This document shows positions 28,995 through 64,000 of a stretch of 64,000 nt of DNA, piece after piece. Source of the stretch: Chrysemys picta bellii (taxonomy: Eukaryota); assembly GCF_011386835.1 (NCBI RefSeq), contig NC_088804.1:25172001-25236000 (forward strand). The letters are read 5' to 3'. The notes below the pieces were generated by a model that did not search any database, was not told where the DNA came from, and worked only from the letters and a program-made list of their open reading frames with translations. How positions within the stretch are numbered: the first letter of the stretch is position 1; each line of letters opens with the position of its first letter. The translations under genes and the position numbers were made by a program.

Positions 28995-29109
28995 GTATGT
29001 ATTGATTTTTTCAATGAGTTTAGCTTTTAGCAGAAATTGGTAACATTATCAAATTCATAAAGATTTTTAAGTTGGAGGTACAGTAAAAAAATGCAATCCT
29101 CACGTTGGG

Positions 29110-29530: not shown

Positions 29531-29669
29531 TGGACTGTAGACCAAGAAGGCCTTGTAACTTCATGTAATATTTCATGTGATGGTAAATATGTGGTATCTG
29601 GCTTGGACGTGGAAAATGCTATATGTGTTACTGATGCAGTAAATGCCACAATGGTGGCATATGTCCAAG
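29531..29669 (+). CDS. WDR88: WDR88 exon 5 (WTVDQEGLVTSC...VAYVQ)
   Basis: splice sites; phase 0-1. Confidence 0.92.
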
Positions 29670-32970: not shown

Positions 32971-32982
32971 GTCTGCTTAATG

Positions 32983-33241
32983 CAGGGGTCGGCAACGTTT
33001 GGCATGCAGCTCGCCAGGGTAAGCATCCTAGCAGGCTGGGCCAGTTTATTTACCTGCTGACGTGGCAGGTTTGGCCGATCGCGGCCCCCACTGGCCGCGG
33101 TTCGCTGTCCTGGCCCAATGGGGGCGGCGGGAAGCGGCGTGGGCGAGCGATGTGCTGGCCGCATCAGCAGGTAAATAAACTGGCCCGGCCCACCAGGGTG
33201 CTTACCCTGGCGAGCCACATGCCAAACGTTGCCGACCCCTG
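32983..33241. mobile_element. hAT MITE (caggggtcggcaa family)
   Basis: TIR; perfect TSD gcttaatg. Confidence 0.88.
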
Positions 33242-34481: not shown

Positions 34482-34611
34482 GTCACCACAGAAGCACAAT
34501 CACAAGATGTTGTTTTGACCCTGATAATGAGAGAGTCTCTTCAGTATCATCTGATAAGACAATAAAGCTTTGGGACATTATAGCACAATCCACCACTATC
34601 ACAATTGATGA
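34482..34611 (+). CDS. WDR88: WDR88 exon 6 (GHHRSTITRCCFDPD...KLWDII...)
   Basis: splice sites; WD motif. Confidence 0.92.
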
Positions 34612-34775
34612 GTAAGAAAACATAGTATATCTATATTAGGCAAGATTTATATGTACTTTTTAAAAAAGTATCCGTGAAATTTGTGTTACAACTTATACTG
34701 GGAAAATGAACAGTAAGTATGTAACCGAATAGCATAATACATGGAAAGGCTGAATAACATACCATTAAATACATG

Positions 34776-35987
34776 TGTAAGCGGAGAATGGTCCCGCTTA
34801 TGGGGAACTGTCCTGGCTTATACACTACCCCAGTGAAATGGGCTAGCGAAAGGATCTGAGTCCTTGCTCCCACTTCCTTTACCCAGAGGCCTGCCTGACC
34901 TCAAGGGCTCCCCTTCCACTCTCCTGTGTGGCAGAGTCCTCGTAACCCCAACAAGGCTGGGCCCAGAATTCCTGCGGAGCTCAACCCCCAACCTTGTTGT
35001 GGTCACTTAGGGCAGGGGCTAGGGTGTCCCCACTCCGGGATGCTCTCTCTGCGCTGGATGCTTCCCTGACCCACTGATCATTACATACAGTTCAAAGCAA
35101 ATACAATTTACTAAACAGCAATCAATTTTAAAAAATAAGGAAAAAATGGGAAAGGCTCAAGGAAAACACATAACCCTGCTGTGTGGCACGGGGACATCAC
35201 AACCAGCGACTCTTTGGAATGTAAGGGAAATTCAGTCTGTTCCTCACAAGTCCCAGGCGCCTTCTGAGGCCCTGGTTGTGCTGCAGGGTTGCTGCAGGTC
35301 AGACACTTGCTTTGGCAGTGGCCACGCGCTCAGGCTCTAGGTGGCAGGACCCTTCTTCCCAGCGTCGCCCCCACCCTGTTGGAGTTACGATCCCCTTTCA
35401 AGTCTGACCTGCAAGGCCTCTTGGCTGGGGGTGTCTCCCTGCACTGGACCTGCTGCCCAGGGTTCCCCTTGCTCTTGCCAGCCGCTCACCGCACCCAGCT
35501 CCGGACTGCTCCAGTCTCAGCTCCACTCTGCCTCAGCACTGCTGCTGCTGCTCTGCCTCCAGCTCTCTGGGCTGCTTCTCTGGCCCCTCTGGCTCTGGTT
35601 GCTGCAGCTCTCCTCCCAGCACTGGCCTGCTTCCTGGGCTGCTTTTCTGGCCCTTCTGGATCTGGCACAGCTGTGCTCCCCAGCTCAGCTTAGGCTCCTG
35701 CTTTCTCCTTAGCTCATCCCCACGCTGTCTGACCCAGGCAATTCCAGTTCACCGGGAGGACGGATTTCCCCCCCCCCACCCCCCCCGGCCTCCTGACTCC
35801 CTGATTAGCCTGCCCGCCCTGTCAATCAAACCGACCTGGAGCATTGGCCTCTCCCCATTATTCCTGGGGACTGTCAGTCTCAGGGTCCTGATTTCCCATT
35901 GACCCTTCCCCTTTCTTTTGGTACTGGGAGCTAGCCAACCAAAACACCCCCTCTGAGTTTTAGTAAGGGGACAACAGTTCCCTTACA
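34776..35987. mobile_element. solo LTR (Gypsy-like, about 1.2 kb)
   Basis: TGTAAG...CTTACA inverted termini; 4-bp TSD catg. Confidence 0.82.
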
Positions 35988-37200
35988 CATGGAAAGGTTA
36001 AATAATATGCTATATACAAGCTTCTTGATGTGAATGATAGATGAGGTGCATCTGTCCATCTGTAAGCATTAACTAAAGCTAACCATCATAGTTTCTAGGT
36101 ACTGAGACATAGAATTTGATAGTGGAGAAAGCAAACAATAGCATGGAGAATGTGCTGTTGAACTGGAAGCTAGTTGCTGATGTCTCTCAGGACTAGCAAC
36201 ACTGGATAATAAATAACATTAACAAATGTGAAGAAGATGAAACACCATTTAGCATGATACAGGTCTCTAAAAGGACTGCAAAATGGAACATATACATGGT
36301 ACAGGATATATTTTTGGAGAAGGATAGGTCTTGATCTGAGTGTGGAATCAGAGTGAAATTATCCGGAGAGAAAACTCACAGTGGGTAATTCACTATCTAG
36401 AGTTGATGGCTTATGAATCTGAAACTCAGGTGGTACCAAAAGGTCAAATCTTTAGAGGTTCAAACTGTCCCTTCATCATTGTGAGGTAAATAGATTAACT
36501 TCTGTGCACTGACTGGAGACATTTCAGATGAGAACATAACACCTGAAATCCATTCTGATCATAGTGACTGTAAAGTTCCTATAGCACTATTCTTAATATT
36601 AGGGATTTCCCTGATATCCTTTCTGTTATTGAGTGTGTTGCTGCATTTTATTGGTGTATGTGCCTGTATCCTGATCCTGAGAGAAGCCCCCACAACTCCC
36701 ACTGAAGTCAATAATACATGAAAATCCTTATATAAAGATAGAATGATATTGTCTGTGTAAGAAGGGAGTATGCAACAAATGAAGATATCAGATGAGCTAC
36801 TGAAAAACATTAACAAATTCAGTGGTTCTGGTTTTAAATCATAAAAGCATTAATCCTAAATTGTCTGTATAAAAAAGTACTATTAAAGTTGCCCTTAAAA
36901 GGATTAGGAATTTACTTAGAATGGGAGACTCAGAGCTGGAACATTTTACTAATCCTTCTTTTAAATTGCAATGGATATAGCATTGTTTCCTGCAGAGATG
37001 CTTGTAATCCCTTCCCCATTGTGGACTGCAGGAATTGCTAAAGTCCTGTCAGGTTCTGGAACTTTGAGACTTCTTTCTTGAAGTGCACCCCCTGTTCTCA
37101 AAATTGGAGTTCACTGTAGAATTCAAATCACTATATAGTTTCATTTTTTATATATATATATAATGAAACTAGAGAGCGAGAGAGAGACTCTTTATTTGAA

Positions 37201-37292
37201 AAAAGCAACAGAGGGTCCTGTGGCACCTTTAAGACTAACAGAAGTATTGGGAGCATAAGCTTTTATGGGTAAGAACCTCACTTCTTCAGATG
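37201..37292. mobile_element. Penelope-like-derived fragment with a degenerate hammerhead-like core on the minus strand
   Basis: same arm sequence as 11430; 10-bp TSD tttatttgaa. Confidence 0.8.
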
Positions 37293-37683
37293 TTTATTTG
37301 AAGGGATCCGTAGCTCACCCTTCAATGTTGGGGTTTAATTAAACTGGTGTGTAGTGTAGTAATCAGAGGATTTTTTGTTACCTGTGGGTGACAAGAAGCA
37401 GGTGATAAGTTCTACTTAAAACTCAGTTAGTACTCAATCCTGTGAGATGTTAAACACTATGTCGCATCTAGGAAAGCACTTAATCACATGCTTAAGCTTT
37501 GGCAAATGAGCAGTTCAAGTAACTTTTACAGAACTACTCAGATGATAAAAGCTAAGAATGTGCTTAAGTGCTTCACTAGATGGGGCCAGAGTGCTCAGAC
37601 CTTGCAAGATCAAGCCCTTACAGCATTCTAATGGCTTTAAAAATCACAGTATCCTGGTGCAGTCATTTTCATTTGTATTTCAG

Positions 37684-37868
37684 GGCACACACCAATGTCA
37701 TCTCAGACTGCTGCTTTTCCATAGATGGTCATTACTTGTGCACTGCATCTTGGGACAAAACCTTAAAAATATGGGATATAAAAACAGGGGAGTTTCGTTA
37801 TCATGGACCTATTTGCTTGAATCAAGGTCATGAAGGTTCTGTTAGTTCCTGTGTTTTTAGCAAAGATG
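37684..37868 (+). CDS. WDR88: WDR88 exon 7 (AHTNVISDCCFS...GHEGSVSSCVFSKD)
   Basis: splice sites; WD motifs. Confidence 0.93.
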
Positions 37869-38990
37869 GTGAGTTATGTTAAATACCATTATACACATCT
37901 TGAAGTATATACATGTAGGACATTTCAGATAAGTCACAGGGGTCATATGCCAACCATATGACTAATTTATTTCTCAATTTCAAAATTTAAATGCTTTTCA
38001 TTCTGATTAAATGGCTACACACATAATGTAAGTAAATTGAAATTGATGGTTTGTATTCTGCTTTACTCAGACATCTGAAATGCTGCTTAATTGATATAAT
38101 CATCAAAGATTTTCTGTAAAAAGATCATGATTGAGAGAATATAGTCGAAACAAACTACTGAGCCACCTCATGGACTGAATGCTTGCTATTATCCACCTGG
38201 TATTAGTTAATGGTTGTAAGGCACTCTGAAAATGTAAAGCACTATATACAGTATAAGGATATATACTATTATTGTTAAGCATATTGAATGAGAGAGAGGA
38301 TGTCACTGTGTATCTTTAGTCAGTACCTCCAGGAGTAAAGTTTCTGCATGGTTCAATCAACATTTTCCAATAATGTGATATTTCAGAAAAACATCTTTAT
38401 GGTATTTTGTGAGATACAGTAGAAGAGCACTATGACTCCTCTGTATAAAATGGTTGATATTTTAATACTTTTGTAATAACTGTGTCCTGGACTAAATAAT
38501 CTCTGAAGCTTAGATGTTAATTTGCCTGTGATATTGCTATTGCAGAGTTAAAGAAAACACCATCAACTTGTTATATTGAAATGGCATCTCGCTTCTTTGC
38601 TGTGCTTGGCTACTACAAATCTTTGTGCCTTGATTGGCTGTTTCTCTCAGAACTTCCCATCTTTATACCCATAACAAACATGGCCTTTTAAAGTACTGAC
38701 CCCTCTTCATCTTGTGATCCCGTCTAAACCCAGTCTTCTCAGTTCGGTGACTTCAATCCTAAACTACACACTTTGGGGGGGAAAAATTCTGGGAGTGAAA
38801 ACATCAAATGTGGTAGCACCAAGTAGTTTGCGGTTCATTCTGTTCAAAGCTAATCTGATAGGGAGATCATTACAAGAAAGTTTTCTTGATATTTTCCCAC
38901 TATCTCTGCCCCATGTTAGAAGAATATGCTCTACTTTGGAGTCAAGGAAATAGATTTACTGCAGGAAAGGTTTTGGAGAAGCTCCTAGTG

Positions 38991-39692
38991 CAGGGGTGGG
39001 CAAACGTTTTGGCCCAAGGGCCACATCTGGGTGGGGAAATTGCTTGCAGGGCCACAAATGTAGGGCTGGTGCAGGGGGTTGGGGTGCGAGAAGGAGTGCA
39101 GTGTGCAGGAAGGGGCTCGGGGCAAGGTGTTGGAGCAGAGGAGGGGTGCGGGGTGTACGAGGGGGCTCGGGGAAGGGGGTTGGGGTGCACACTGTGGGAG
39201 GGGGCTCAGGGCAGTGGTGCAGGGAGGGGTGCGGAGTGCTGGAGGGGGCTCAGGGCAGGGAGTTGGGGTGCAGGAGGAGTTCGGGGTGCGGGCTCCGGCC
39301 TGGTGCCGCTTACCTGGAGTGGCTCTGGGGTGGCAGCTGCGCACACCGGGGCCAGGGCCAGGCCAGACAGGCCCTGGCCCTGCGCTGCTCCCGGCACCAT
39401 GTTCCTGCAGCCCTGGGGAGGGGGGCCAGAGGGCTCCGCGTGATGCCCTTGCATGTGGGTACCTCCCCTGAAGCACCCATTGGCTGCAGTTCCCTGTTCC
39501 CAGCCAATGGGAGCTTCGGGGGAGATACCCACAGGCAAGGGCAGTGAGCGGAGCCCTCTGCCCCCCCTCCCCTAGGGGTTGCAGGGACGTGGTGCTAGCC
39601 GCTTCCTGGAGTGGTGCAGGGTCCGTGGCGCCATGGGGGTGGCAATCCCGCGGGCCGGATTTGGCCCGCGGGCCATAGTTTGCCCACCTCTG
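38991..39692. mobile_element. GC-rich hAT MITE
   Basis: TIR caggggtgggcaaac / gtttgcccacctctg; perfect TSD tcctagtg. Confidence 0.88.
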
Positions 39693-40119
39693 TCCTAGTG
39701 AATGAAGTGTATTTTATCCACTGGTTCTCAACTGCAGCAAGTACTAAACTTACCAGTAAAATAAAAGCTATAGTAATGAGTAAATGTAGTTGTTTTTCTA
39801 GCCAAAGCTTAGTAATTTTAAAAATAACTTTTTGCTATTTTAACTTTTTAAAAATAAAATGTCTCATCAAATTTCATGTCATCAGCATTTTCTTTTACTT
39901 TGTAAGCTCTGTTGTATTTTTGATAACTGAATTTTATGCCTATGTTTATACTCATTAAAAAAATCCAGGGACTTTCATTACCTTGCTAGAGCATAACTAA
40001 TACCAGTGGATTATTTAAATTCTGTTAACAGTCTGACTCAAGTCTGGATGAGGCTTGTTCTGTTAGTCTGTATAGAAAAAACCCAGAGAAATAATATGGC
40101 ATCTAATTTTGTATTTTAG

Positions 40120-40202
40120 CATCTCTTGTAGTGTCTGGAGCATATGACAAAACTATAGCTCTGTGGGATGCAGGAGCAGGATATAAAAAGCTAGCGTTAA
40201 AG
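40120..40202 (+). CDS. WDR88: WDR88 exon 8 (SLVVSGAYDKTIALWDAGAGYKKLALK)
   Basis: splice sites; WD motif. Confidence 0.92.
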
Positions 40203-40260
40203 GTACTAAATTCCTATTTGCTCACTAGTTTAGTGAGAAGCTATTAAATGTACAGCTAGT

Positions 40261-40304
40261 AATTTGTTAGTCTCTAAGGTGCCACAAGTACTCCTGTTCT
40301 TTTT
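40261..40304. mobile_element. short Penelope-like-derived fragment
   Basis: aatttgttagtctctaaggtgccacaagtactcctgttc matches the right arm at 23550-23590. Confidence 0.75.
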
Positions 40305-40387
40305 ATAAGTATTGTGTATCTCTTTACATTAACTGATGTGTGTGTCTTTTTCTCTCTCTTCCCCCCACCCTAACCCTCATAGACATA

Positions 40388-40683
40388 GGCCTAGTCTTCA
40401 CTTACCGGCTGGTCCGGCGGCACGCCATCGATGTTCTGGGATCGGTTTATCGCGTCTGGTTAAGACACGATAAATCGATCCCGGATCGATCCCGGAAGTG
40501 CTCACAGTCGGCGCCGGTACTCCAGCTCGCCGAGAGGAGTACGCGGCGTCGACGGGGGGAGACTTCCGGCCGCGTCTGGACCGTGGTAAGTCCGGACTAA
40601 GGTACTTCGAATTCAGCTACGTTATTAACGTAGCTGAATTTGCGTACCTTAGTCCGAAGTCCGGACTAAGTGGGGACCAGCCC
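40388..40683. mobile_element. PIF/Harbinger-type MITE, CpG-rich, with internal palindrome
   Basis: TIR ggcctagtcttcactta / taagtggggaccagccc; 3-bp TSD ata. Confidence 0.75.
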
Positions 40684-42490
40684 ATAGACAAGAATCTGTC
40701 ATGTACTGCATGTGACTTTAATTTCCTGGAGACAATATATTCTTTTATAATTACCGACTATTTTCTTTGTCAGGTGTGTTATTAACATACTACTAGATTT
40801 CTATCTGACTGCATCAGCTGTGTTAGTAACTGCATTGTCTAGAACAGCATATTTACCTTGGAAGATCATGACTTTTCCCCAGTAAGAGACTGGTCAGTGT
40901 GTGTATAAATTTAAAAATGCTATACCCCTTTGTATGTATGTATCCATATAATATAATGGTCTACATTAAAAAAATGCTAAGGTCACAAAGGAGATGCACT
41001 CAAAAGTCCGAAAATGCTAAAGTTAAGGTTGTCCATTCAACTTTAACTCTGCCCCCACGTTCATATGTATTATAATACATCTTTAGTTACAGGTACATGC
41101 TCAACCACCCTCTTATTCAGTGTTCGGGATAGATGGTGCTTCGTAAATGAGGCAGCTCCCAGCTGTCTGATATTTACTTTATCCTCATCACTCAGTGTTA
41201 GAACCTTGTTCCTCATTCACTACACACAGTATGACTGCCTCATACCTGAGGCAACAAGGTGGTACCTCTGTGGAGGAAGCACATTATGATACATGGGAGC
41301 TAGTTAGTTTAGGACTTTATGGTACAAATTTTCAAAGGCCCTCCAAAATGTGCCATTAAAATTTGATGATTGACTTGAAATGATCAGATGTTAACTGTGG
41401 ACATGATGGATTGTACCTTTAAGAGTACAGCTCTTAATTTCATGCTCTGACATGATGTCCTTAATCCAGTTTTGGTGACATTAAGATTGATCTGCTGCCA
41501 TGTGCTGTACATTGACTGCCAAAGAAACAAACTCATTGCTTGTAGCAAGTGCAGAATATAGTAGCTGCACAGTTACTGTGGGAGGGCAGAGAGATTCAGG
41601 GTATCTGTTGCTCTGGTCACTGCAGTTTGCTGGCTGGCTGGTGCAAGAACTGAGTTTAAGGTTTTATTTTGAATGGTTAGCTGTATCATTTGCAAAAGGC
41701 TCAGAGATAGTGACTGAAACTTATAGGTGCCCTCCTTGTACTCGGGTTCCCATTTTAGAACTGTAAATGAGAAAAGATCAGTATTATAAATCTGAATAAA
41801 ATTCTGAAGACAAAAAACATCAGTGAACTATCTTCATTGCTGAAAAAGACATTTAGCTAAAACATTTATCTTCAGAATTTTGTTTCTTCCGTCCTACTCT
41901 TTGTTCATCTCACTTGGAACTGACTCTTTGGTTTTAAAGAACTCACTCTGAACCCAGAATCTAACATAAGAATTATCATTGTTGCAAGTGACTGTGTGTG
42001 GAAGAGAGCTTGAGAGCACTGATTATCATCGCCACAAAGACTGCTTTTGATATGGAAGTTACTGTTATGATCTAGAATATGATTCAATAAGTCAGTCACT
42101 TCCAATGTTATTTAGGTATCTGATATTAGTGTCTGATGTATGTAGGTTTTAAAACCTTTCAGTAGAACCTAGCAATGAATTTAGAGATATTAGTGGTGTT
42201 GACAGTAAGTCTATTTTTTTGTACCTCTGGCATACTTATAATCCCATCTTTTCAAATTTGTGTGTGCAAGATGTGCTTGTATTATTTACACATGCAGGTA
42301 CTATGACTGTATGCACAATAATAGTAATTTTACATCCAATTTTGTAAAGTTTGGCCATAATATGCATAAAGTTGGGCCATAATATTTGTTTGATGGAGGT
42401 TGGGTAAAAATTCATTGAAGCTGGTGGGTGTGATAGCTGCCATTCATAGGATAAATCTAAGGAGCAGTTAAGCTCCTTTTTGGAGTAAGA

Positions 42491-42687
42491 TACACCTCTA
42501 CCCCGATATAACGCGACCCGATATAACACGAATTCGGATATAACGCGGTAAAGCAGTGCTCCGGGTTGGGGGGGAGGGGCTGCGCACTCTGGCGGATCAA
42601 AGCAAGTTGGATATAACACGGTTTCACCTATAACACGGTAAGATTTTTTGGCTCCCGAGGACAGCATTATATCAGGGTAGAGGTGTA
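42491..42687. mobile_element. Tc1/mariner (Tigger-like) MITE
   Basis: TIR cacctctaccccgatataa / ttatatcagggtagaggtg flanked by TA. Confidence 0.82.
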
Positions 42688-43964
42688 GTTGAAACAATAG
42701 GAGCACCACCCCCAAAACACAGGTCAAATGCAAGGCTAGTCAGGAACTGAGCTATGTGGGAGGAGGGTATGGGGAGAAGGGTGGGTCTCTGGATATTGTT
42801 TGATGTAGATGTGCACATCTGTGGGCAGAAGCAGCCAGAGAAAAGCAGCCAAAAAGCCAAGCAAACAGCAAGAGAAGCCCTGGAAATGTTGCTGGGAAAG
42901 AAAGCAAGGAGAGGAAGTTTATTGGGTAGAGTGCAAGCTGAAAAGAAGCTTTGAACTCTGAGCAAAGAAACTGCCTCCTGTTGTTTGATACCCACTGTGT
43001 TCAGGGAAACAAGGACTTTGTGAACATGCTTTGTAAATGAAACCGATTGCATCAAAGAAATACATGACTCTAAAATGGCAAATTTGCCCTATATCCTATT
43101 AAATACGTCTTTGCCTTTCTCCTTGTATGTTAGAAAATATTAGTTTCTTTTTGATAAATGTTAATGCATACTTTTCATATGTGAAGTTTGTCAATCAAAA
43201 TGAAAAACATCCTTTTTGGAACTCAAGGAGTTTTCTCATTAATTCTATTAATTTTTAATAAATTCATGGTGTGGGTTACTTCATTTTTGTTTTTAGCTTG
43301 ATTCTCTTCTTGTGGTAGCAGACCTAATGGTGCTCTCTCAAATCTCCATGCATGCTCAGTGATCAGCTGTGCAGCAGCAAGCAGGACCAATCCACCCAAT
43401 GCAACTGCCTGCCTTCTGAATCATCTCCCTTCCCTTGAAGTGGGGAAAGGCTGGTGGCTGCCCTCAAAGCTCTCCCCCTTGCCATCTGACCCACATCTTC
43501 AAACTGCTCTACATTATGTGCACTAGAAAACAACTCTCTCCCTGTCTTCTTCCCTCCCTCTCTCCCTCTCTCTCTATATATATTTAGCTAAATTATTTAA
43601 AAATGTAGAAAGGAAAACACACAAACAAATAATCTCACACACACACACACAAGGAGGACTGGAACCAAAAATAACTACCACACTATCTGCCAGCACTGCA
43701 TCAACCAGAACTACAATTCTAACTGAGATGCTGCTGTTACACAAATCCTGGATAGAGGATCAGGCTGTGTCAAGTATGTGCAGACAAAGATTAACCTGAT
43801 AGCAGCTGTTCTTCTGACCAGGGACGAGTGAGCATGCACAGAGATTTTGCTTACTGTAGGAAGGGCTGCCAGAGTGGATTTGTGGGGAAGACAGCTATTT
43901 CCTTTATTATAAAAGTAATAAAGTTCTTACTTTTGGTCTACAGTTACAATTTGTTTTGCTCCAG

Positions 43965-44033
43965 GGCCATGGAGACTGGGTGATGGATGTTGCAATTAGC
44001 AACAACAAGAAATGGATCCTTTCTTCCTCAAAG
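43965..44033 (+). CDS. WDR88: WDR88 exon 9 (GHGDWVMDVAISNNKKWILSSSK)
   Basis: near identity to the recalled human peptide; splice sites. Confidence 0.95.
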
Positions 44034-44217
44034 GTAACAAACTAACTTACAGATGTGGTATAGGAAGCTAATTTGGTCACAGATTTCACTATGTATTTCA
44101 ATATTTATTTTAGAAAAATTATAATTTTGTGTAACAGTTGACTCAGACAGTCTTTCATTTGTAGTTTTATGATTAGTTGAAAAGCAATTACAGAAAATAT
44201 TAAAAAGAATTTTATAT

Positions 44218-44900
44218 TGTGATAGACCCAGACCAGTTGGGAACAGCAGAGTAGCAGAAGGGAGATATACTGGCCACTGGATAAGTAGTTTTCTGTTCCC
44301 TGAGTGACCAGAGCAGGGGCTGCGCCAGGCTAATAGACCACCTGACTCCAATTAATCTGCTAAGAGTCAGGTGAGGCAGTTAAGCACCTGACTCTAATTA
44401 AGGCCCCTCTGATGCTATAAAAGGGCTCACTCCAGTCAAGCCAGGGGGAGCCAGAGGAGAGGAAGAGTGTGCGAGGAACTGGGAGCAAGAGGTGTACAAG
44501 AAGCTGAGAGTGAGTAGGCGTATTGCTGGAGGATGGAGAAATACAAGTGTTATCAGACATCAGGAGGAAGGTCCGGTGGTGAGGACAAAGCAGGTGGTGG
44601 GAGGAGGCCATGGGGAAGTAGCCCAGGGAGTTGTAGGTGTCGTGCAACTGTACCAGGAGGCACTCTAAACAGCTGCAGTCCACAGGGCCCTGGGCTGGAA
44701 CCCGGAGTAGAGGGCGGGCCCGGGTTCCCCCCATATCTCCCAACTCCTGATCAAACACAGGAGGAATTGACTTGGACTATAGCTTCTACCAGAGGGGAAG
44801 GTCTCTGGACTGTTTCCTGACCCACAGGGTGAATCTGTGAAGGGAGCAAATCCACCAATAAGCGCAGGACCCACCAAGGTAGAGGAGGAACTTTGTCACA
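44218..44900. mobile_element. solo LTR (Gypsy-like)
   Basis: TGTGATA...TGTCACA termini; 4-bp TSD atat; TATA-like ctataaaa. Confidence 0.82.
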
Positions 44901-45184
44901 ATATGTAGGTGTACATGTTTGATGTGACCAATAAACTCAGTTTCTAAGATTACTAAATATTTGTGGTAAGTAAAACAATTTTTTGTTTTCAAAGTAATGA
45001 CAGTTTTAAAAATAATGCCCATCTCTTATCCAAGAAATTTTCCTCTTATAAGTAGAGTTATTTGCGCTTTGTGCAACTGATGAGGCCTTTATCCATTGGA
45101 CAAATACTGTACTGGAGCTTGCTGTGGTGCTTGACCAGTGATAACATGTAAATACATTTCCTAATTGTAGTTTCTGATTTTTAG

Positions 45185-45277
45185 GATGCTACTTTGAGAT
45201 TATGGAACATTGAAAAGGCTAATCATGTTCCTGCGGCAATAGAAAGCAGAAATACAAGAGGCTCAAAAATAGCTCAA
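45185..45277 (+). CDS. WDR88: WDR88 exon 10 (DATLRLWNIEKANHVP...KIAQ)
   Basis: splice sites; phase 0-0. Confidence 0.92.
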
Positions 45278-46218
45278 GTAAGCACTATGTGGTGTTACGG
45301 CTGATGGGTCTGTCCTTTTAGTCTCTAAGTTACACCTCACTCTGTTCAAAATCAAAATATGAATGGTTGAAGAGACATTGTCAACAAGATTGCTGGGTTC
45401 AAAAATTGATTTACCTTATTTTTCTCTCTTCGCAAAATTTATGTAATTTATTTATATGTGAGTTGGGGAGGGAGAAGAGGGAATTTCAAAACAAATGCAT
45501 CAATGCTTTTCTTTCTTTTTTTTAAAAAGTATTTGGTAAGGATGCAGAAGTCCATGTACAGATGCCGTATTTTTAGAAACAATAGCAAACCAAATAAAAC
45601 ATTTTTAAAATAAAAAAATCCTTTGGCTTCCAAACCTGATGCTTAGTAGTATGATTGGCTGCATACAACACTGCTGGCCTCAGGCAGTGGTATTCATGCA
45701 CTCATGGACATTTTTGGCTCCCCAGTAAACATAAAAAATATTGAGTTTACCAAAGAAGGAAGAGAAAAGGTATGAAATCACTACCAGATGTTAAGAGGAG
45801 GGGGGAAAAGAGAAATGTTGATGACAATTCAGTTTTAATTCCAATTAAACAATTTGTTCTAAACCATGTGAGATTGGGAAAGGGAAACCATCTTTATTTG
45901 TTTTGTAAAACTCATCACACCTCCAGTACTGTATAAACTAAAATAATAATAAATTTGCTAAGGCAATATCACAAACTACAAAAATATACTAGTAAATTTA
46001 GGAAAGCTTCCTGCACAATGACTGGATGGGCCTGATTTTCAAGAGTATAGAGCACCCACTGCTCCATTTGAAGCTAATAAGAGCTGCAAGTACTCAGCAC
46101 CTCTGAAAAGCAGGGCTGCATATTTATAGTTGAGCATCAGTGGTAAAATGATTCATGTCTGGCACATATGATTAACTAACATCATTTTTGTTGTTTTTTA
46201 ATGTTATATTTACATCAG

Positions 46219-46356
46219 TGTGAAGAATGTGAAAAACCTTTCTCACTCCTACAGTGTGATGACTCTGAAGTGGTCACCAAGTGTGTATTCTGTCGACTGG
46301 CTTCTCCTTCGAGAAATATTTTGCCATTACCACCTATTGTAGCACCTGATCTCTAA
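46219..46356 (+). CDS. WDR88: WDR88 exon 11, terminal (CEECEKPF...KCVFCRL...PDL*)
   Basis: acceptor catcag|; TAA at 46354-46356. Confidence 0.9.
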   Translation, partial: CEECEKPFSLLQCDDSEVVTKCVFCRLASPSRNILPLPPIVAPDL

Positions 46357-51835: not shown

Positions 51836-51909
51836 GGCGCCGTGGCTTAGTTGGTTAAAGCGCCTGTCTAGTAAACAGGAGATCCTGGGTTCGAATCCCA
51901 GCGGTGCCT
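51836..51909 (+). tRNA. tRNA-Thr (anticodon AGT at 51870-51872)
   Basis: full cloverleaf: acceptor GGCGCCG/CGGTGCC, anticodon stem CCTGT/ACAGG, T-loop GGTTCGAATCC; sequence matches the vertebrate Thr-AGT type as recalled. Confidence 0.98.
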
Positions 51910-55310: not shown

Positions 55311-57334
55311 TCTAGTTCCCTGCCTTGTACCTGCTGTACCCATACTGCCTGGCATGCTGCCCTGCCCCCACGCCCAGTGACCTCTGTTTTGTCATACCAA
55401 CTGTGCCTGGTGTCATGTCCTGTCCTGAAAACCCCCCATCCTTCCCTGTGCTCTCTTTGCCCTGTGCTCTCTACACTGCTCTGCACCCATAGTGCCTTAC
55501 ACCCTAAAGCTTGGCAGCCTGCCCTGCAAGCTACATGGTCAGTTCTTACAGTGCCCTGCCCTGACCACTGCCTCCCCTGCCCTGCCCTGCCCTCCCTGCA
55601 CACAAGGCAGAAGCAGGTACCCCCAATACATGTGATTAAGTCTTTCCCCAAGCTGCTGGGGCTACTGCTTTTCCAGCTTCTCTCCTTGGGGTGGGCTCTA
55701 GGGAGTCCTCCCAAGACTGATTACGCAAGAGAGGAGATCAAGCTGCTGCTGAACATACACAACTCCTGTAGGCAGAAGATAGGTCCTCCACCTGCCAGTG
55801 TGCTCAAGCTGGTAGGTAGCTGCTCTCTGGGAAGCTCTTGTCCCACCAATAGCTCCATCCTTTACAGGAGAAGGAGCTAATGCATTCACTAGCAGAAAGT
55901 CTGTAGTGGTGGTTCTTCAGTATTTACTGGTTTGTACCAGTGGGCTTATTTTAACCATCCTGAGTATCTATAACCAAACTGTACCTTAAGAAGTTAACAA
56001 GTTTAGAGAGTATGACATTATCCTTTTTTTTGGGTCAAATAAAAATGACATTTTAGCATATTAAATTTAGCTGATGTGTTTTATATGTCCTGAACTCAAT
56101 ACTTCTCAAATTGTTTGAACAAGAGATACTAAGCTTCTCTTTTGATTGGAAGAGCAAGGTTCAGAAAAAAAAGGACAGAAAGAAAAGTTATCTCTATACA
56201 CTGCTTCCTCATTGCCTTTAATGAGGCCAGAGAGTGTCTAAATGAGTTAACAGGGTTTTCTTTGTTTATTGCCATTTCAGTAATTTCAAAGCAGCATGTA
56301 TTATTAAATGCATCAATTTAACATCAAATGGGTAATGGATAGAGAGTGGTTACTTATTATTTATGGTGCATGTTATACATTATTCTGGGTCATTGCCAGC
56401 CGGAGGATGATTAATAGTGGGGATTTAATAATATTTCAATATGGTGTTTTCTACTAAACAGTTTATTTAACAACAGATTTACAATGCCTATCACCATTAT
56501 TCTTGTCCTATAGAATATTGTGTTGACCCATGTTGCTGTAATTGAAGTTATACAGAGTAATGGGTTATTTTTATATTTTGAAAATATAAACCTACTATAT
56601 CTTCTCATAGTAGGTTTAATCAGTATTTTAGAATGTTTAAACAAGTGCTTTAGAGATAGCTAAAGCGCACGTTAGTTTGAATCAAATTGAAGGAAAATCA
56701 TATTTACTATAAAGGCTTAGAGTGCCTAGTCCATGTTTAATGTTAAATAAGTTGTGGTGTTGTATGTTTAGGCTGCTTAAGTTCTGTTGACAATTTCAGT
56801 TTTCTATAACAGAATTTTGAGGTGCCTATTCCTTGATGAGCTGAAATTTCCATCTCAAAACTCTCTGTTCCCTTGCTCTAAATCTTCAATAGCTTCTTAG
56901 TTAGGGAATGAACTTACTCTCTTCTTCTCTTTTTTCCCTATACTTGGGATTTATATTTGCAAAATGTATTACAGAAAAGTATTGACATCACTGAACAGCT
57001 TTGGGACTTTTTATTTAGCTTCCCCTACTGAAGGATTTCACAAATAAATCACTGTCTATTTCTTGTGTAAAGTGGAAACAAGTTCTCTGTGCCATTAGTA
57101 ATGCTGGGTGTATAGGGGGAAAAAGTAACATTTTAAATCTCAACCTTCAAAAATATTTATAACATTTAAGAGCCATATTCTGCCCTCAGTTATGCCAGTG
57201 TATTGACTTCAGTAGTGATATTCCAGAATTACACCAGTGTAAATGAGAGAAAAATTTGTCCCTAAATCTAATGGCAAAAGGCCAAATCCTGCAAACATTA
57301 CCAGGTGTTGTGAGTAACCTCAATGGAGTAAAGT

Positions 57335-57456
57335 TAAAGGGACCAGATGTCCCGATTTTATAGGGACAGTCCCGATAGTCAGGGCTTTGTCTTATATACT
57401 CGCCTATTACCCTCTACCCCGTCTCAGTTTTTCACACTTGCTATCTGGTCACCCTA
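57335..57456. mobile_element. hAT Blackjack-like MITE
   Basis: right TIR tctggtcacccta; perfect TSD agtaaagt. Confidence 0.82.
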
Positions 57457-58149
57457 AGTAAAGTATTAGAGCCTTAAGATCCCATCCACATACTTATACA
57501 TGTGAGTAACCTTAGTCATGTGTGGGGCTATGAATTGGCACGGCGGAATGCATGCATCTAATTTACAGGATCAGAGCTTCAGATTGTAAGATGCTCAAAC
57601 AGGGAACTTTCAGTTGTATTTATGTATAAGGTACTATATAAATAATATTTAATAATAGGCAATATAAAAAGTAAGCATAATCCAAAAAACAAACAAATTA
57701 AACAAATTTTACATTGAAAACTGAAAAAAATGTATTTTGGAGCAGTATCCTGGGTACCCTGGGAATAAACTTCCTTGTACAGACTTTATATATAAACACT
57801 GTATGGAGGAAAACAAAAGAACTATCATATGAAAAAATTCAAAGGAAAGAATAAATTAAGGCCATATTTATCATATCACACTATGATACTTTTCAGTAGT
57901 TCACTGATTAGTATTGTAAAGAAAACTCCAAGAAAAAGAAACTACTAAGGAGCCTGCCCATAATGCTGGAGTATAGATCTATAGCTGCATAGATAACAAT
58001 GATTTACAAAAAGTAAAATCTTGTATAAAGCATTTTTCTACTTCTTTGATCTTATTGTATGATAAGAACAAAATTACACAACTTCTTAGAATCAGTTCTG
58101 AAATAAATCCCTGGTCAAAATTCCACATCAGAGGAAATTTTATTATGGA

Positions 58150-58421
58150 TAAGGATATGATTTAGTCACAGAGGTCATGGAAGTCATGGAGTCCCTGAGT
58201 TTACCGGACCTCCATGACTTCTTCAGCTTCAGCTGTCAGCGGTTGTGGCCAGGGAAGAGCTGGGGCTGTGCGCCCCCTACCCCTCCGTGACTGTGGCCAG
58301 AGCTGGGAATTTTTTCATTTTTGTGTCTCAAAATATTTCAGTTTTACATGAATTTTTGTTTTTTGCCCGCAACCTGTCCATGACTTTGACTAAAAATAAT
58401 TGTGACCAAATCTTAACCTTA
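58150..58421. mobile_element. internally deleted hAT-type element
   Basis: TIR taaggatatgatttagtcac / gtgaccaaatcttaacctta; perfect 8-bp TSD attatgga. Confidence 0.8.
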
Positions 58422-58564
58422 ATTATGGATTGTATTAGTGGTGTTACTGCAGATTTTGTAGTAGTCCTTTCAGGCACTAGGAAAATGAGCATGAACATCC
58501 TGTGTTTTGGCAATTCTCTCACATACTGTATGTAACTAAACCAACTTGCTCCTAGCTCTTACAC

Positions 58565-58898
58565 CAGGGGTTGGCAACCTTTGGCACATGGCTCGCCAGG
58601 GTAAGCACCCTGGCGGGCCGGGCCGGTTTGTTTACCTGCCGTGTCCGCAGATTTGGCTGATTGTGGCTCCCACTGGCCGCGGTTCGCCATTCCGGGTCTA
58701 TGCGGGCGGCGGGAAGTGGCAGCCAGCATATCCCTCGGCCCGCGCTGCTTCCCGCCGCCCCCATTGGCCCGGAGCAGCGAACTGCAGCCAGTGGGAGCCG
58801 CGATCGGCCGAACCTGTGGACGCGGCAGGTAAACAAACCGGCCCGGCCTACCAGGGTGCTTACCCTGGCGAGCAGCGTGCCAAAGGTTGCCGACCCCG
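58565..58898. mobile_element. hAT MITE (caggggtcggcaa family)
   Basis: TIR; TSD tcttacac. Confidence 0.88.
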
Positions 58899-58918
58899 TC
58901 TTACACACTAGTGGAGGC

Positions 58919-59093
58919 TAGGGTTGCCATCCCTCCAGGGTTGGCCAGGACTCTCCCAGAATCGGCATTGGTCTCCTGGTGACTACTGAAAGCAATCCGG
59001 GAGATTTTAATAGGCTATTTTAAGAAAATGACATTATGTCATGTTGGGGAAAACAACCTCCCACAATAACTTCAGTCAGAGTTGGCAACCCTG
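58919..59093. mobile_element. hAT MITE (tagggttgcca termini)
   Basis: TIR; TSD gtggaggc/gtggaggt. Confidence 0.8.
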
Positions 59094-61205
59094 GTGGAGG
59101 TTGGTTTTGTGTTGGTCTGTTTTGGATAAAGTGTTATATCAATCTCTGCACTGTTGCTCGTAGGGGGACAGGATTATTCAGGATCTTTTTTGCTAAATGT
59201 GGTGCAGCCAATACACATGTCCCGCAGCTTGAAGAAATGCTGCACACAGGAAGAAATGCTTATGTGAGTCAGACATTTATGAACACTTTCTACGTGAGAG
59301 TGAATCTGTTAGATGAGGTACCAGTAATGTACACTTACAACATGTTGTATTTGAATTATTACATCAAAACCAATAATGAATATTCTTTTACAATTTATCA
59401 ACAGGAATGGCCTGGTGAGTTAGCCAGCATGGCTCAGGAGTGGCCTGGTAAATTCACTTTTGAACATGGTCAGTCTGAAAGACACTTTAACACATTTGAG
59501 GAAATGGGGCAAAATCTGAATAGATTCAGCAGCACAGATCCAATTTGTCTTGACTCCGTAAGAATGATTCTGTTTTTTTTTTTTTAATTTGGCTACCCAG
59601 AGTAATGAAGCCCAGCCTGCAGTAACAGATATATAGATATCTGTTTAATTATGTGAGAAATAACTAATATTTTAAAACTATGTTTATAAAATGCTGATGC
59701 TCCTGGAATGAATCATAGCACTGATTTCTTTCCATAGATAGATTAACGTAAAATAAATACATCACATACGTTTTTTTCCGTGTTTTAAATCTAGCCAATC
59801 AGGCAAACTGCTCTCTCTGTACATAAACTTCCATTGACTTCAGGTGGGAGAGGGGTCAAGAGTCTTGTATGGATGGGTCTATTTGTTAAATGTTATAAAG
59901 AAATTCCTGAAATAATATGAAACCTGCTTGGATGTATTCAGTGTCCATTCTGCTGCGGTATCAGTTTTTCCATACCCAATATCTTTTCCAAGGTTTGCAA
60001 CCACTCTGCTTTGAAAGGAAGAGTTAAGCATTTCCAATTTGTAATATTTGAAGAAGACAACCATTTCTTATTCACTTGTTTCAAAGTTTTGTGCAACTTT
60101 TTGAGGGACAAAAGTGACTTGAAATCCAAAAAATCATTCAGGACTCGGCCTTTGTCTCAGAGGGATCAAATACGTGGGCACACCCATGTGATGGTATATC
60201 CAGGCCCTGACTCTGCAAATACTTGCACATGCATTGTGAGCAGGCCCAGTGAAATCCAAGTTAAACATGTACATAAGTGTTTGCAGGATCAGTGCCAAGG
60301 AATATTGATTAACTGACTTGCATGAGTAGTTCCATTGACTTCAGTGGGGCCATTCACATGCTCAAAATTACTCACATGCATAAGTGTTTGCCAGATTGGC
60401 ATCCCAGTTCTCTCCTAGTATTTATCTCCTATATCTAGGTTATTTTAGCCAGTATCTTGAGACTTAAAGCAAACCCTCAAGAAATGAATTAATCAGCATG
60501 ACTCTGAAGTGTTTTAATGCAAACATAAAATTGATATTCTCTCTTAAAAAATTTGGACAATTATTCATGCTAAAATGATTCTTTAAAAATATTATGCCAT
60601 GTAAAATACCATGGAAGAATGTTTTGTAAAGCAATTAGAAAATGTGAAACAAATGCTAACATTTAATTTTAATCATTTTTGTGTGCATGTGTATGAGCAT
60701 GTTCTCTTTATATTTGTATAGGGTTATTTGACTCCCAAGTCTCTGGGGCTTTTGTTTGTTTTTGGACCCTTCATTCCCAGACCCCTTTCTGTTTGGTTCC
60801 TCCTCCCTCCTGCACAGTCTAAAGAGTTTGGAGCAGCAAAAGGGGCAGGGAACAAAGAACAGAAAAGGATGAGAAAAGAAAGGTTAATTTAAAAAAGATC
60901 TGAATTATGTGGCAGTGCTAATTAACACTCTGGGGACTGCTGTAGCCTGTTGAAGGCCACTTATATTTAACATAAGAGTGTAGTTACCAGTTTTTAAACA
61001 TCCTTAAAGTTCATACATCATCTGCCAAGTAGCAGGTTGGAGCAGCTGTCTCCCTATAAATATTTCCATTTTTGTTTTACAGGGACTTCAGCAAGTGTAT
61101 AGAGTTTTCCCACCCCCAGCACTTGCAACATCATGTCACTTAAAAAGAAATTGTACAGTTTATAAAATTATATTGCTCTAGGTTACAGCAAGTGGTGCTC
61201 ATAGG

Positions 61206-61805
61206 TAGGGCCCTATCAAATTTACGGCCATGGAAAATGTGTCACAGACCGTGAAATCTGGTCTTTTGTGTTCTTTTACCCTATACTATACAGATTTCAT
61301 GGGAGAGACCAGCGTTTCTCAAATTGAGGGTCCTGACCCAAAAGGGAGTTGCAGGGGGGTCAGAAGGTACCATACCATATCATTACATACCACGCCAACC
61401 TTCTGTGCTTCAGAGCTGGGCGCCAGAGAGTGGCAGCTGCTGACTGAGGGCCCAGCTTTGCAGGCAGCAGTGCAGAAGTAAGGGTGGCAATACCATACTA
61501 TGCCATCCTTACTTCTGCACTGCTGCTAGCAGTGGCTCTGCCTTCAGAGCTGGGCTCCTGGCCAGCAGCCGCCACTCTCCAGCTGCCCAGCTCTGAAGAC
61601 AGCGCCGCCACCAGCAGAAGTAAAGGTAGCAGTACTGCAACTCCCCCATAATAACCTTGCGATCCCCCCCATAACTCCTTTTTGGGTCAGGACCCTTACA
61701 ATAATGACACTCAGATTTAAAAAGCTGAAAAAATGAAATTCACGATTTTTAAAACCCTATGATCGTGAAATTGACCAAGATGGACCATGAATTTGCTAGG
61801 CCCTA
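61206..61805. mobile_element. hAT MITE (tagggcccta termini)
   Basis: TIR tagggccctatcaaattt / gaatttgctaggcccta; perfect TSD ctcatagg. Confidence 0.85.
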
Positions 61806-64000
61806 CTCATAGGGCAGTGTACCCAAGCATTTAACTTAATGAACATTTGCTAATGTTCATTAAGTTAAATGTGTTCTGCCAAGCAGTGTTATTTAAAAAG
61901 GATATAGGCAAGCAAGACCTGCTTGATTTTTCAACATGCTGCTAGAAAGGTGGTCTTGTATAGTCAGACAGTAGCCCTGGAAGTCAGGTGAGCTGGTTCT
62001 AGTCCCAGGTTTGGTACTCACATGCTGTTTGATCCTGGGTATGTTAACTCTCTGTAGTCCATTTCCTTACCTGTAAAATGGCGATAATACTACTTACCTA
62101 CTTCACAGGGATGCTGTGAGAGTTAGTTAATATTTTGTGAAGCATTCTGAGCTCTGGGATAAAAGCTCTTTTTTAGTGTAAAGTATTATTCTTGTTGATA
62201 AACTCAGTACTTGTGTAACAAAGGCCACATTTACTGGGGGTCTCTTCAGTGGCATCAGTAAAATCCACCAGTTTATTTGGGCTCTGCATGGGTTCAGGGG
62301 TCTACCCACCTGGATCTGTTTGCAGGATTGGAGCCTCTGTTTGCAAATGTAACTCTTTGGAGGCTTAATTGAAAAGGTCCCTTGAAAATTAGCCCTAAAG
62401 ATTTTTATTCGGTGTAGTTTTCCATACATCACTAGCAGATGTTCATTAAGCATTGGGCTTGATTTATATATCACAATGTATATACCACATATTTTACACT
62501 TAAATATTTTGCAGGCTGGAATTTTTTCATTTTTGTGTCTCAAAATATTTCAAAGTTTTACATGAAAGGGCTAGTGAAATATATTTGATATTGACAGGGG
62601 AGAGAAAAATATAATGGATGTAGCATGTGATGGCATAGTTAGAAGCTGCTTTAAAAATGTCTCAAGTCTTTTGAAAGCCAGCACACTGAAAGATGGCTGT
62701 GGACAAAGTGGAAGAAAGACAAATGCCCAATTTCTTATGACAGTTTCCTAGATTGGTTGCAATCTTATTTAAATGGAACAAATTAATGCTTGGTTGAGGA
62801 CAGGTAATTCTTGGAAGTTAACTTAGGGATGGTGAACTGACTAACCTTTCTCAATGATCATCTGTGAGGGCATCATACTGACTACTTGATCCATCTGTTC
62901 ATGCATACCAAGGTATAACTAGCCCCCATATTGAGAGTTTTGACCCTCTTGCAGCCTATATAGGACACTGTACAAGCAGGATAGTAAGGACCGGTAAATT
63001 CTACAGTGATACTTTTAACTGCACACAATGATGAATAAAGGCCTATTGAGTAATATTAAGAAATATTGTTTCTGGCCAAGATGGCTACCTCAGAATATAC
63101 AACATTCACATAAACATTTCTAGAATGATGATGAAGCATTAAAGTTATGTACAGATAGAATATCCAATACATTTACAGAAATACACTCTTTTATTGTTTA
63201 AGCTGGATACTTGGATCTATTTATCTTTGAAGACTTGGTGGGATGAAGCAAGCTGGTATAATTTTGAAAGCAGTGACTGCTCAGGTCCTCTCTGTAGACA
63301 TTACACAGAGGTAGTGTGATAATGTCCTTCTCTAACATTTGATAAAGTACATATTATTCTCCTGGTCCTTATCTGTGGATTTTTACATTTAAAAAAAATT
63401 GTATCTTTCTTGTATGGGCAAGGATGAAGTATATTGGATGTGGATATATGAATGGTGTGCAATGCCCTGGATTGTTCACCTCTGTTGTTTGTAACTATAG
63501 TCCTCTGTAAGTAGTATACAGTATGTTGTAATAATTAGAAACTTGCATTTTACACTGCTAGATGTATTAATTACTATACAATGATTATTATCCTGCCACC
63601 TGCATATAATTAGTTTTTACTTGTTTAGTAGTGAAAGCTTTGCTTAAAATTACAGCAACTTGGTTAAGCGTACCACAGGCATGAACCTATTTAATTTTTA
63701 TTCATGAACTCATGGAACCAGAGTTTAAAAGAAAATGTTATAACGTATAATGTATAGATAAAATGCTTGCCATCGGGAACAGATGGGGCATACGTTATTG
63801 GTTTTATAGAAGTTTTCAAAATTCATGTGGGTTGAATAAGTAAAAGAATAATGAATAAAATGTGGGCCTGGGCCATTAAATATTCATGACAGTTTGCAAG
63901 ACTGCAGATAAATTATTTTTTGCCTCAGCAATGTCTAGCTTCTGTAGGTGAGAAAAGGAGACGTGAACTGTTTTCATATATAACTTATAATATAGACACT

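What the first reader, a model, noticed from the sequence alone, without database searches (positions are those of the whole stretch)
55635..63506. Unannotated-looking CAP-superfamily gene downstream of tRNA-Thr
Seen: four exons spread over 7.9 kb splice in frame to a signal peptide plus all CAP motifs in order: HNxxR, W-x3-LA-x2-AQ-x-W, FEH, G(Q)NL, WxDE, CxHYT(E)-LVW, IGCG and VCNYxP. The longest contributing exon is only 177 nt, so the ORF track misses it. Established: these motifs define CAP proteins (CRISP, PI16, GLIPR1, CLEC18, venom CRISPs), which act in reproduction, immunity and lipid binding. I do not recall a CAP gene between WDR88 and LRP3 in mammals. Inference: a sauropsid-retained or lineage-specific CAP paralogue lost in mammals.
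Basis: partly seen in the sequence, partly recalled or inferred. Interest (0 to 1): 0.8.

Follow-up and report, generated by a model that had tools for sequence, protein, structure and literature searches.

The report
Disabled relic of ancient CAP gene
The exons are real: this is the reptile copy of an old, little-studied vertebrate CAP-domain gene that sits between WDR88 and LRP3 in sturgeon, gar and bowfin, but here it has no usable start codon and two lost splice sites, so it is most likely a decaying pseudogene rather than a hidden working gene.

Summary
The CAP exons are real. Four + strand exons (55635-55811, 59405-59557, 63203-63310, 63409-63506), joined with X at each junction, score 224 bits against a profile of six orthologues. 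They score 92 bits against a generic CAP profile.

The gene is not lineage-specific. It is the positional orthologue of a gene that NCBI auto-names "cysteine-rich venom protein-like" in gar, bowfin and sturgeon, with further members in axolotl, newt and a caecilian. In the three fishes the order is WD40 gene, tRNA-Thr(AGU), CAP gene, CUB/LDLa gene. The window has the same WD40 exons and an identical tRNA. Intron positions and phases match, and the tree places the window copy inside the orthogroup (100/99).

The window copy looks disabled:
- The only ATG at the ancestral start is out of frame and runs straight into TGA.
- The acceptors of exons 4 and 5 are TT and AT, not AG.
- Exon 5 is 32 nt short.
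- 17 of 78 orthogroup-invariant residues are changed, including a cysteine.
- Only unspliced, low-depth contigs were found.

No amniote protein joined the orthogroup. I read it as a fairly recent unitary pseudogene (about 0.78). Interest is modest.

The parts
28929..46341 (+). Exons of the upstream WD40-repeat gene (WDR88-like). This is a synteny anchor, not part of the CAP gene.
   Evidence: tblastn of the translated gar and bowfin upstream WD40 gene segments found collinear hits from 28929 to 46341, with E down to 2e-26.
51836..51909 (+). tRNA-Thr(AGU), a conserved neighbour upstream of the CAP gene.
   Evidence: ARAGORN. It is 74/74 identical to tRNA-Thr(AGU) genes in the same place and orientation in bowfin, gar and sturgeon.
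55630..55635 (+). ATG at the position of the ancestral start, directly followed by TGA. It is two bases out of register with the exon 1 reading frame.
   Evidence: Sequence reading. The distance from this ATG to the conserved TDY motif matches that of the amphibian orthologues.
55635..55811 (+). Exon 1: a hydrophobic signal-like segment and the first CAP helix (TDY...HNSCR...). The donor CTG|GTAGGT is in phase 0.
   Evidence: The donor position and phase are the same as in gar and bowfin.
59405..59557 (+). Exon 2: ELASMAQEW, FEH and GQNL. It has a canonical acceptor (cag) and donor (GTAAGA).
   Evidence: tblastn E = 4e-12 to gar. The boundaries are as in gar and bowfin.
63203..63310 (+). Exon 3: WWDE and CSGPLCRHYTE. 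It has a canonical acceptor (aag) and a weak donor (GTAGTG).
63407..63408 (+). The place of the exon 4 acceptor dinucleotide. It reads TT where gar and bowfin have AG.
63409..63506 (+). Exon 4: LVWARMKYIGCG...VVCNYSP. The donor CT|GTAAGT is in phase 2, as in the orthologues.
   Evidence: one search gives 69% identity to gar; one search gives a mean column identity of 72% in the three-way DNA alignment with gar and bowfin; Pfam CAP E = 0.07.
63772..63773 (+). The place of the exon 5 acceptor dinucleotide. It reads AT where gar and bowfin have AG.
63774..63839 (+). Probable relic of exon 5 (GN...). It is 66 nt against 98 nt in bowfin, so it is out of phase, and three of the four conserved cysteines are missing.
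   Evidence: GGGAACAG is identical to gar at the expected exon start, 268 nt after exon 4, which is the same intron length as in gar. Homology of the rest of the segment is weak.

Best explanation
The stretch is the positional orthologue, in a reptile-like genome, of an ancient bony-vertebrate gene. In other species that gene encodes a secreted or membrane-tethered protein with an N-terminal CAP domain, cysteine-rich EGF-like and ShK-like modules, and a hydrophobic C-terminal tail.

In this genome the copy is a unitary pseudogene that was disabled fairly recently.
- Translation cannot start in frame, because the ATG runs directly into TGA.
- Introns 3 and 4 have no AG acceptor, so the CAP core strand (LVW) and the following exon cannot be joined in frame.
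- Exon 5 has lost 32 nt.
- Residues that are invariant elsewhere in the orthogroup have been replaced.

Shown: homology, synteny, shared intron positions, the lesions, and the excess change at invariant sites. Inferred: loss of function, its recent date, and the domain reading of the C-terminal half of the orthologues.
For: Homology:
- The exon 2 search of 1.84 billion representatives gave only four hits, all CAP proteins. One is a gar protein that matches every exon.
- The X-joined peptide scores 223.9 bits on the orthogroup profile.
- The tree places it inside the orthogroup at 100/99, on the tetrapod side.

Synteny:
- WD40 gene, CAP gene, CUB/LDLa gene lie in that order on one strand in bowfin, gar and sturgeon.
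- The window holds WD40 exons at 28.9-46.3 kb.
- The tRNA-Thr(AGU) is identical in the window, bowfin and gar; sturgeon has one at the same place.
- All four intron positions and phases coincide with gar and bowfin.

Lesions:
- ATG 55630 is out of frame and followed by TGA, and exon 1 has no other in-frame ATG.
- TT stands at 63407-8 and AT at 63772-3 where the orthologues have AG.
- Exon 5 is 66 nt against 98 nt.

Relaxed constraint:
- 17 of 78 residues invariant in six orthologues are changed, against 2.5-12% in leave-one-out tests (pooled Fisher p = 2e-5).
- Changes include the Cys of WADxC, NM to SV, GHYTQ to RHYTE and FTY to FTS.
- The terminal branch is 1.25 against 0.18-0.40 for the others.
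- Both differences from a close relative within exon 2 are non-synonymous, and the exon differs at about the intron rate (2/153 against 34/2222).

Expression and annotation:
- Only unspliced, low-depth contigs were found in RNA or possible-RNA runs. One runs from exon 2 on into intron 2.
- A profile search that included the window's own exon words returned no amniote protein in the orthogroup.
Against: - Exons 1-4 (178 codons) carry no internal stop or frameshift. In a simulation this becomes unlikely once neutral divergence passes about 5%. So either inactivation is recent or some constraint persists.
- The lesions rest on one assembly. I could not see whether related species share them, because the read laying difference list was truncated over exons 3-5 and exon 1 was outside the laid stretch.
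- Against gar alone, the excess change at invariant sites is not significant (p = 0.15).
- The amniote branch is long and is represented by one sequence.
- The RNA runs available were few and of unknown tissue. Absence of spliced reads is weak evidence.
- Exons 6-10 lie beyond the window and were not seen.
Confidence: 0.78

Rival explanations
1. It is a live but unannotated CAP gene. Either the lesions are assembly errors or polymorphisms, or the gene uses an unusual start and unusual splice sites. Candidate starts are the upstream in-frame ATG at 55263 or a CUG in the leader. One candidate splice pairing is the alternative donor at 63316 with the AG at 63421-2, which stays in frame.
For: - Four exons are fully open and 55-58% identical to amphibian orthologues.
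- The openness argues against long neutral decay.
- Donors of exons 1, 2 and 4 and acceptors of exons 2 and 3 are canonical.
- The frame of exon 1 stays open upstream to an ATG at 55263.
Against: - Three to four independent lesions of different kinds are unlikely to all be errors.
- The upstream ATG adds about 124 residues of low-complexity, minisatellite-derived sequence in front of the signal-like segment.
- The in-frame rescue splice removes the LVW core of the CAP1 motif. The other cryptic options give a premature stop or a 23-residue insertion inside a strand (reading).
- Exon 5 is out of phase.
- No spliced contig was found, and no annotated amniote protein.
Confidence: 0.15
2. The locus is transcribed and kept for something other than a canonical CAP protein, such as a non-coding RNA or a short truncated peptide, after loss of the original function.
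For: Low-depth unspliced contigs over exon 2 and over intron 4 / exon 5 appear in a polyA RNA run and in possible-RNA runs.
Against: Those contigs are collinear with the genome, have depth of about 2, and may be DNA carry-over or pre-mRNA. Nothing shows selection for a new product.
Confidence: 0.05
3. The motifs are a chance arrangement in non-coding DNA.
For: Single exons give only weak or no Pfam hits.
Against: - 224 bits against the orthogroup profile.
- Collinear CAP hits for each piece.
- Conserved synteny and intron phases.
Confidence: 0.01

Closest known systems
Orthogroup auto-named 'cysteine-rich venom protein-like' or 'CRISP3': Lepisosteus oculatus XP_069037277.1/XP_069037276.1, plus Amia ocellicauda, Huso huso, Ambystoma mexicanum, Lissotriton helveticus and Microcaecilia unicolor (P0002, P0005-P0011)
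   Same: - Same locus in the three fishes: WD40 gene, tRNA-Thr(AGU), CAP gene, CUB/LDLa gene.
- Same intron positions and phases.
- Shared family quirks: FEH or FDH, GQNL instead of GENL, and CSGP-x-C-x-HYT.
   Different: - The window copy lacks an in-frame start and two acceptors, and has a shortened exon 5.
- It changes 22% of the residues invariant in the six others.
- Its C-terminal cysteine-rich exons lie outside the window and were not seen.
Amphioxus, hemichordate and echinoderm CAP proteins with EGF-like tails (P0024-P0026, P0032)
   Same: They are the next-best matches to the orthogroup profile (236-291 bits). They combine a CAP domain with cysteine-rich EGF-like C-terminal modules.
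   Different: They score far below the vertebrate orthogroup (563-686 bits). They fall outside it in the tree. Their synteny was not examined.
Classical vertebrate CAP families: CRISP1-3 and venom CRISPs, PI15/PI16, CRISPLD1/2, R3HDML, GLIPR1, CLEC18
   Same: All share the CAP fold motifs. The GQNL and CSGP-x-C-x-HYTQ wording resembles PI15, CRISPLD and R3HDML as I recall them; this is from memory and was not tested.
   Different: - PI16, CRISP2-like and CRISPLD1b score only 104-124 bits on the orthogroup profile.
- PI16, CRISP2-like, CRISPLD1b and GLIPR1L1 lie outside the orthogroup in the tree.
- Pfam finds no CRISP-type Crisp domain (PF08562) and no LCCL or C-type lectin domain in the orthologues.
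- No CLEC18, PI15 or true R3HDML sequence was in hand for a direct test.

Membership tests
CAP superfamily (PF00188) | Significant match to a CAP-domain profile over the whole domain | tested here: met
   The X-joined exons score 92 bits against a profile built here from 96 distant PF00188-bearing proteins, aligned from the HNxxR helix to VCNY-x-P. The orthologues score 78-84 bits on Pfam CAP. Pfam itself could be run only on single exons; exon 4 gave E = 0.07, below the cut-off.
CAP superfamily (PF00188) | CAP signature motifs intact. The PROSITE CRISP_1 (GHYTQ-LVW-xx-[STN]) and CRISP_2 (..C-N-Y-x-P-x-G-N) patterns are as I recall them. | tested here: not met
   The motifs are recognisable but degenerate: RHYTE-LVWARM has E for Q/A and M for S/T/N, and SVVCNY has S where the orthogroup has Y. 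In addition, the two halves of CAP1 cannot be spliced together, because the acceptor is missing.
CAP superfamily (PF00188) | N-terminal signal peptide on a translatable ORF | tested here: not met
   A hydrophobic leader ending ALG|SPP is present, but no in-frame ATG precedes it. The ATG at 55630 is followed by TGA. No signal-peptide predictor was available.
WDR88-LRP3 interval CAP orthogroup (gar, bowfin, sturgeon, salamanders, caecilian) | Position between the WD40 gene with tRNA-Thr(AGU) and the CUB/LDLa gene, all on the same strand | tested here: met
   The upstream side is met. The downstream CUB/LDLa gene lies beyond the window and could not be seen. It is present in all three fish loci.
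WDR88-LRP3 interval CAP orthogroup (gar, bowfin, sturgeon, salamanders, caecilian) | Shared exon-intron structure | tested here: met
   The exon 1/2, 2/3 and 3/4 boundaries are in phase 0 and the 4/5 boundary is in phase 2, at the same residues as in gar and bowfin.
WDR88-LRP3 interval CAP orthogroup (gar, bowfin, sturgeon, salamanders, caecilian) | Monophyly with the group in a tree that includes other CAP families | tested here: met
   The seven-row clade has support 100/99, and the window copy lies on the amphibian side. Its exact sister is unsure because its branch is long.
Functional protein-coding gene | Start codon, canonical splice sites, an open joined frame, and spliced transcripts | tested here: not met
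   The start is out of frame, two of the four acceptors seen are not AG, exon 5 is out of phase, and only unspliced contigs were found.
CRISP family proper (CAP plus hinge plus ICR/Crisp domain) | C-terminal Crisp domain (PF08562) and grouping with CRISP1-3 | tested here: not met
   Pfam finds only CAP in the orthologues. The shrew CRISP2-like protein lies far from the orthogroup in the tree. The window's own C-terminal exons were not seen.

The most novel reading that the evidence does not exclude
The WDR88-LRP3 interval CAP gene is an undescribed additional vertebrate CAP subfamily: a CAP domain with EGF-like and ShK-like modules and a hydrophobic tail. It has stayed next to an unchanged tRNA-Thr(AGU) gene for more than 400 million years. 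It survives in non-teleost ray-finned fishes, salamanders and caecilians, and was lost repeatedly elsewhere. On this reading the reptile copy is still expressed, through a non-canonical start and splicing, or it marks a very recent loss that could date and explain the gene's disappearance in amniotes.
Probability: 0.12. Interest if true: 0.5.

Novelty: new member of a known kind. Interest (0 to 1): 0.3.

Why it matters
The finding shows that the standard list of vertebrate CAP genes (CRISP, GLIPR, PI15/16, CRISPLD, R3HDML, CLEC18) misses one old orthogroup. That group is annotated only under misleading automatic names such as 'venom protein-like' and 'CRISP3'. This reptile-like genome preserves a readable relic of it at the ancestral locus.

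The relic gives a dated example of gene loss in amniotes. It also gives a clean synteny marker, the unchanged tRNA-Thr(AGU) beside the gene, for finding other relics. No working gene has been uncovered here, so the practical weight is modest.

Tried and rejected
Searches that gave little or nothing:
- Pfam on the single exons gave only a sub-threshold CAP hit for exon 4.
- A word-index homology search with exon 2 inside its carrier ORF gave no hit.
- Pfam on the ten longest ORFs of the window, run to find neighbouring genes, gave only a hAT domain.
- The look-up of encoding contigs found nothing on record for P0002, P0009 and the window ORF 55263-55877.
- The newt gene spans 395 kb, so no DNA or neighbours could be fetched.
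It gave no spliced contig. The listed differences were cut short over exons 3-5, so whether relatives share the lesions stayed open.
- Three literature searches found no paper describing this orthogroup.

Readings considered and rejected:
- U12-type introns: the donors do not fit.
- Read-through of intron 3: it contains an in-frame TGA.
- The cryptic acceptor at 63421-2: it causes a frameshift and a stop at 63492-4 unless paired with a weak alternative donor, and that pairing deletes LVW.
- The upstream AG at 63345-6: it gives a stop or a 23-residue insertion.
- The upstream ATG at 55263: it adds a minisatellite-derived extension.
- Chance.

Not attempted:
- Deep-time dN/dS, because synonymous sites are saturated.
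Full report
**Observation.**
- With splice sites read from the DNA, and later checked against orthologues, the exons are as follows:
  - Exon 1, 55635-55811 (177 nt), donor CTG|GTAGGT.
  - Exon 2, 59405-59557, between cag and GTAAGA.
  - Exon 3, 63203-63310, between aag and GTAGTG.
  - Exon 4, 63409-63506, donor CT|GTAAGT in phase 2.
- Pfam on single pieces gives only a sub-threshold CAP hit for exon 4 (E = 0.07).
- Against PDB sequences, the best hit of exons 2, 3 and 4 is a CAP protein at the collinear position: Sol i 3, a PR-1 protein and Ves v 5. Exon 1 weakly hits natrin.
- I joined the pieces only with X at each junction.
  - The peptide scores 223.9 bits on a profile of six orthologues built without it.
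  - It scores 92 bits on a profile of 96 distant PF00188 proteins.
- The CAP reading is therefore real and not chance.

**What it is.**
- An exhaustive HMMER search of 1.84 billion representatives with exon 2 returned four proteins, all CAP.
- One of them, the gar protein XP_069037277.1 ('cysteine-rich venom protein-like'), matches every window exon.
- Word-index and profile searches added bowfin, sturgeon, axolotl, newt and caecilian proteins at 563-686 bits.
  - There is then a gap to amphioxus at 291 bits.
  - PI16, CRISP2-like and CRISPLD1b score 104-124 bits.
- No amniote, teleost or anuran protein joined the top group, even though the query alignment contained the window's own exon words.
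- In a maximum-likelihood tree the window peptide sits inside this orthogroup (100/99), on the amphibian side. Its terminal branch is 1.25 against 0.18-0.40 for the others.

**Synteny and gene structure.**
- In bowfin, gar and sturgeon the gene lies between a ~400-residue WD40 gene and a CUB/LDLa gene (LRP3-like), all on one strand.
- The window holds collinear WD40 exons at 28929-46341.
- A tRNA-Thr(AGU) lies 0.8-0.95 kb upstream of the CAP start in all three fishes.
  - The bowfin and gar genes were aligned with window 51836-51909 and are 74/74 identical to it.
  - All are in the same orientation.
- Exact mapping of the gar and bowfin proteins on their loci gives ten coding exons.
  - The first four intron positions and phases coincide with those of the window.
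- This is therefore the positional orthologue, not a lineage-specific paralogue.
- Pfam sees only CAP in the orthologues.
  - By eye, their C-terminal half has EGF-like and ShK-like cysteine patterns and a hydrophobic tail. This domain reading is inference.

**State of the window copy.**
- Start codon.
  - The ATG at 55630 lies at the distance from the conserved TDY motif expected from the amphibian proteins.
  - It is two bases out of register with exon 1 and is followed directly by TGA.
  - Exon 1 has no other in-frame ATG.
- Exon 4 acceptor. The dinucleotide before exon 4 is TT where gar and bowfin have AG, and no AG lies within 60 nt upstream.
- Exon 5 relic.
  - It begins at 63774 with GGGAACAG, as in gar.
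  - It lies 268 nt after exon 4, which is the intron length in gar.
  - It is preceded by AT, not AG.
  - It is 66 nt against 98 nt, so it is out of phase, and three of the four conserved cysteines are missing.
- Invariant residues.
  - Of 78 residues invariant in the six orthologues, 17 are changed (22%).
  - Leave-one-out tests on each orthologue give 2.5-12%.
  - Fisher tests give p = 2e-5 against the pooled orthologues, 0.012 against the caecilian and 0.15 against gar.
  - The changes include the cysteine of WADxC, NM to SV, GHYTQ to RHYTE and FTY to FTS.
- Cryptic splice options give a premature stop, a 23-residue insertion inside the CAP1 strand, or loss of LVW (reading).

**Expression and relatives.**
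- Twenty DNA-type runs from nine coded organisms hold more than half of the words of the stretch, so close relatives exist.
- A search with exon 2 found one possible-RNA run and one polyA RNA run.
- Laid on 58001-64000, these runs give only collinear, depth ~2 contigs.
  - One runs from exon 2 on into intron 2 (59409-59664).
  - One runs from intron 4 into exon 5 (63544-63788).
  - No joint fell at any exon boundary.
- A DNA run of a relative about 1.5% diverged differs in exon 2 at 59448 (Gly to Asp, the ancestral residue) and at 59471 (Gln to Lys).
  - Both changes are non-synonymous, and the exon differs at about the intron rate.
Whether the lesions are shared is therefore unknown.

**Dating and caveat.**
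- Exons 1-4 (534 nt) have no internal stop or frameshift.
- In a simulation, the chance of this is about 0.3 at 5% neutral divergence from substitutions alone, and about 0.04 once assumed indels are included. It is below 0.1 at 10%.
- Complete inactivation is therefore recent relative to the ~350 My amniote branch.
  - Much of the excess change probably accrued under weakened rather than absent selection.
- This is the main reason I leave 0.15 for a live gene or assembly artefacts.

**Comparison with known families.**
- The closest known family is the fish and amphibian orthogroup above.
- The next closest are invertebrate deuterostome CAP-EGF proteins.
- The classical vertebrate CAP families sampled are more distant.
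- Three literature searches found no description of this orthogroup. The library does not cover all journals, so this is weak evidence of novelty.
- Earlier first-stage notes on this genome call it a turtle. I did not test that.

**Verdict.**
- The 'hidden functional, lineage-specific gene' reading is not supported.
- The locus is best described as a recently disabled relic of an ancient, automatically annotated but undescribed vertebrate CAP orthogroup at a deeply conserved locus.
- Interest is modest (0.3).

Noticed in passing
window 51836-51909; L001 9199-9272; L002 9054-9127; L003 9083-9156: A tRNA-Thr(AGU) gene lies in the same place and orientation between the WD40 gene and the CAP gene in the window, bowfin, gar and sturgeon. 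The window, bowfin and gar genes are identical over all 74 nt. In the two aligned fishes (bowfin and gar) a T-run follows at once. In the window the 3' flank is GC-rich, with no immediate T-run.
   Followed up: partly
window 52159-53628, degenerate on to about 55500: A C-rich minisatellite (units of about 35 and 114 nt, 68% G+C, strong C-over-G skew) fills most of the 3.7 kb between the tRNA and CAP exon 1. The same spacer is under 1 kb in the fishes. The array creates long spurious ORFs on both strands.
   Followed up: partly
window 28929-46341 (+): Exons of a WDR88-like WD40-repeat gene, collinear with the gar and bowfin gene. One aligned segment (34481-34636) has a stop just past the conserved part, probably at an exon end. 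The gene model was not built.
   Followed up: partly
window 10811-11476 (+): An ORF with a hAT C-terminal dimerisation domain (Pfam E = 4.5e-6), a transposon remnant upstream of the WD40 gene hits.
   Followed up: no
window 58200-59100 and 61200-61800: Very high-copy repeats lie inside CAP introns 1 and 2, with depth up to a million-fold in a relative's DNA run. Many opposite-strand joints around 61464/61538 suggest a palindromic element. The repeat at 58546-58911 is open on both strands.
   Followed up: no
window 63311-63408: Intron 3 is only 98 nt here, against 1.2-1.35 kb in gar and bowfin. A deletion that shortened it may also have removed the acceptor.
   Followed up: no
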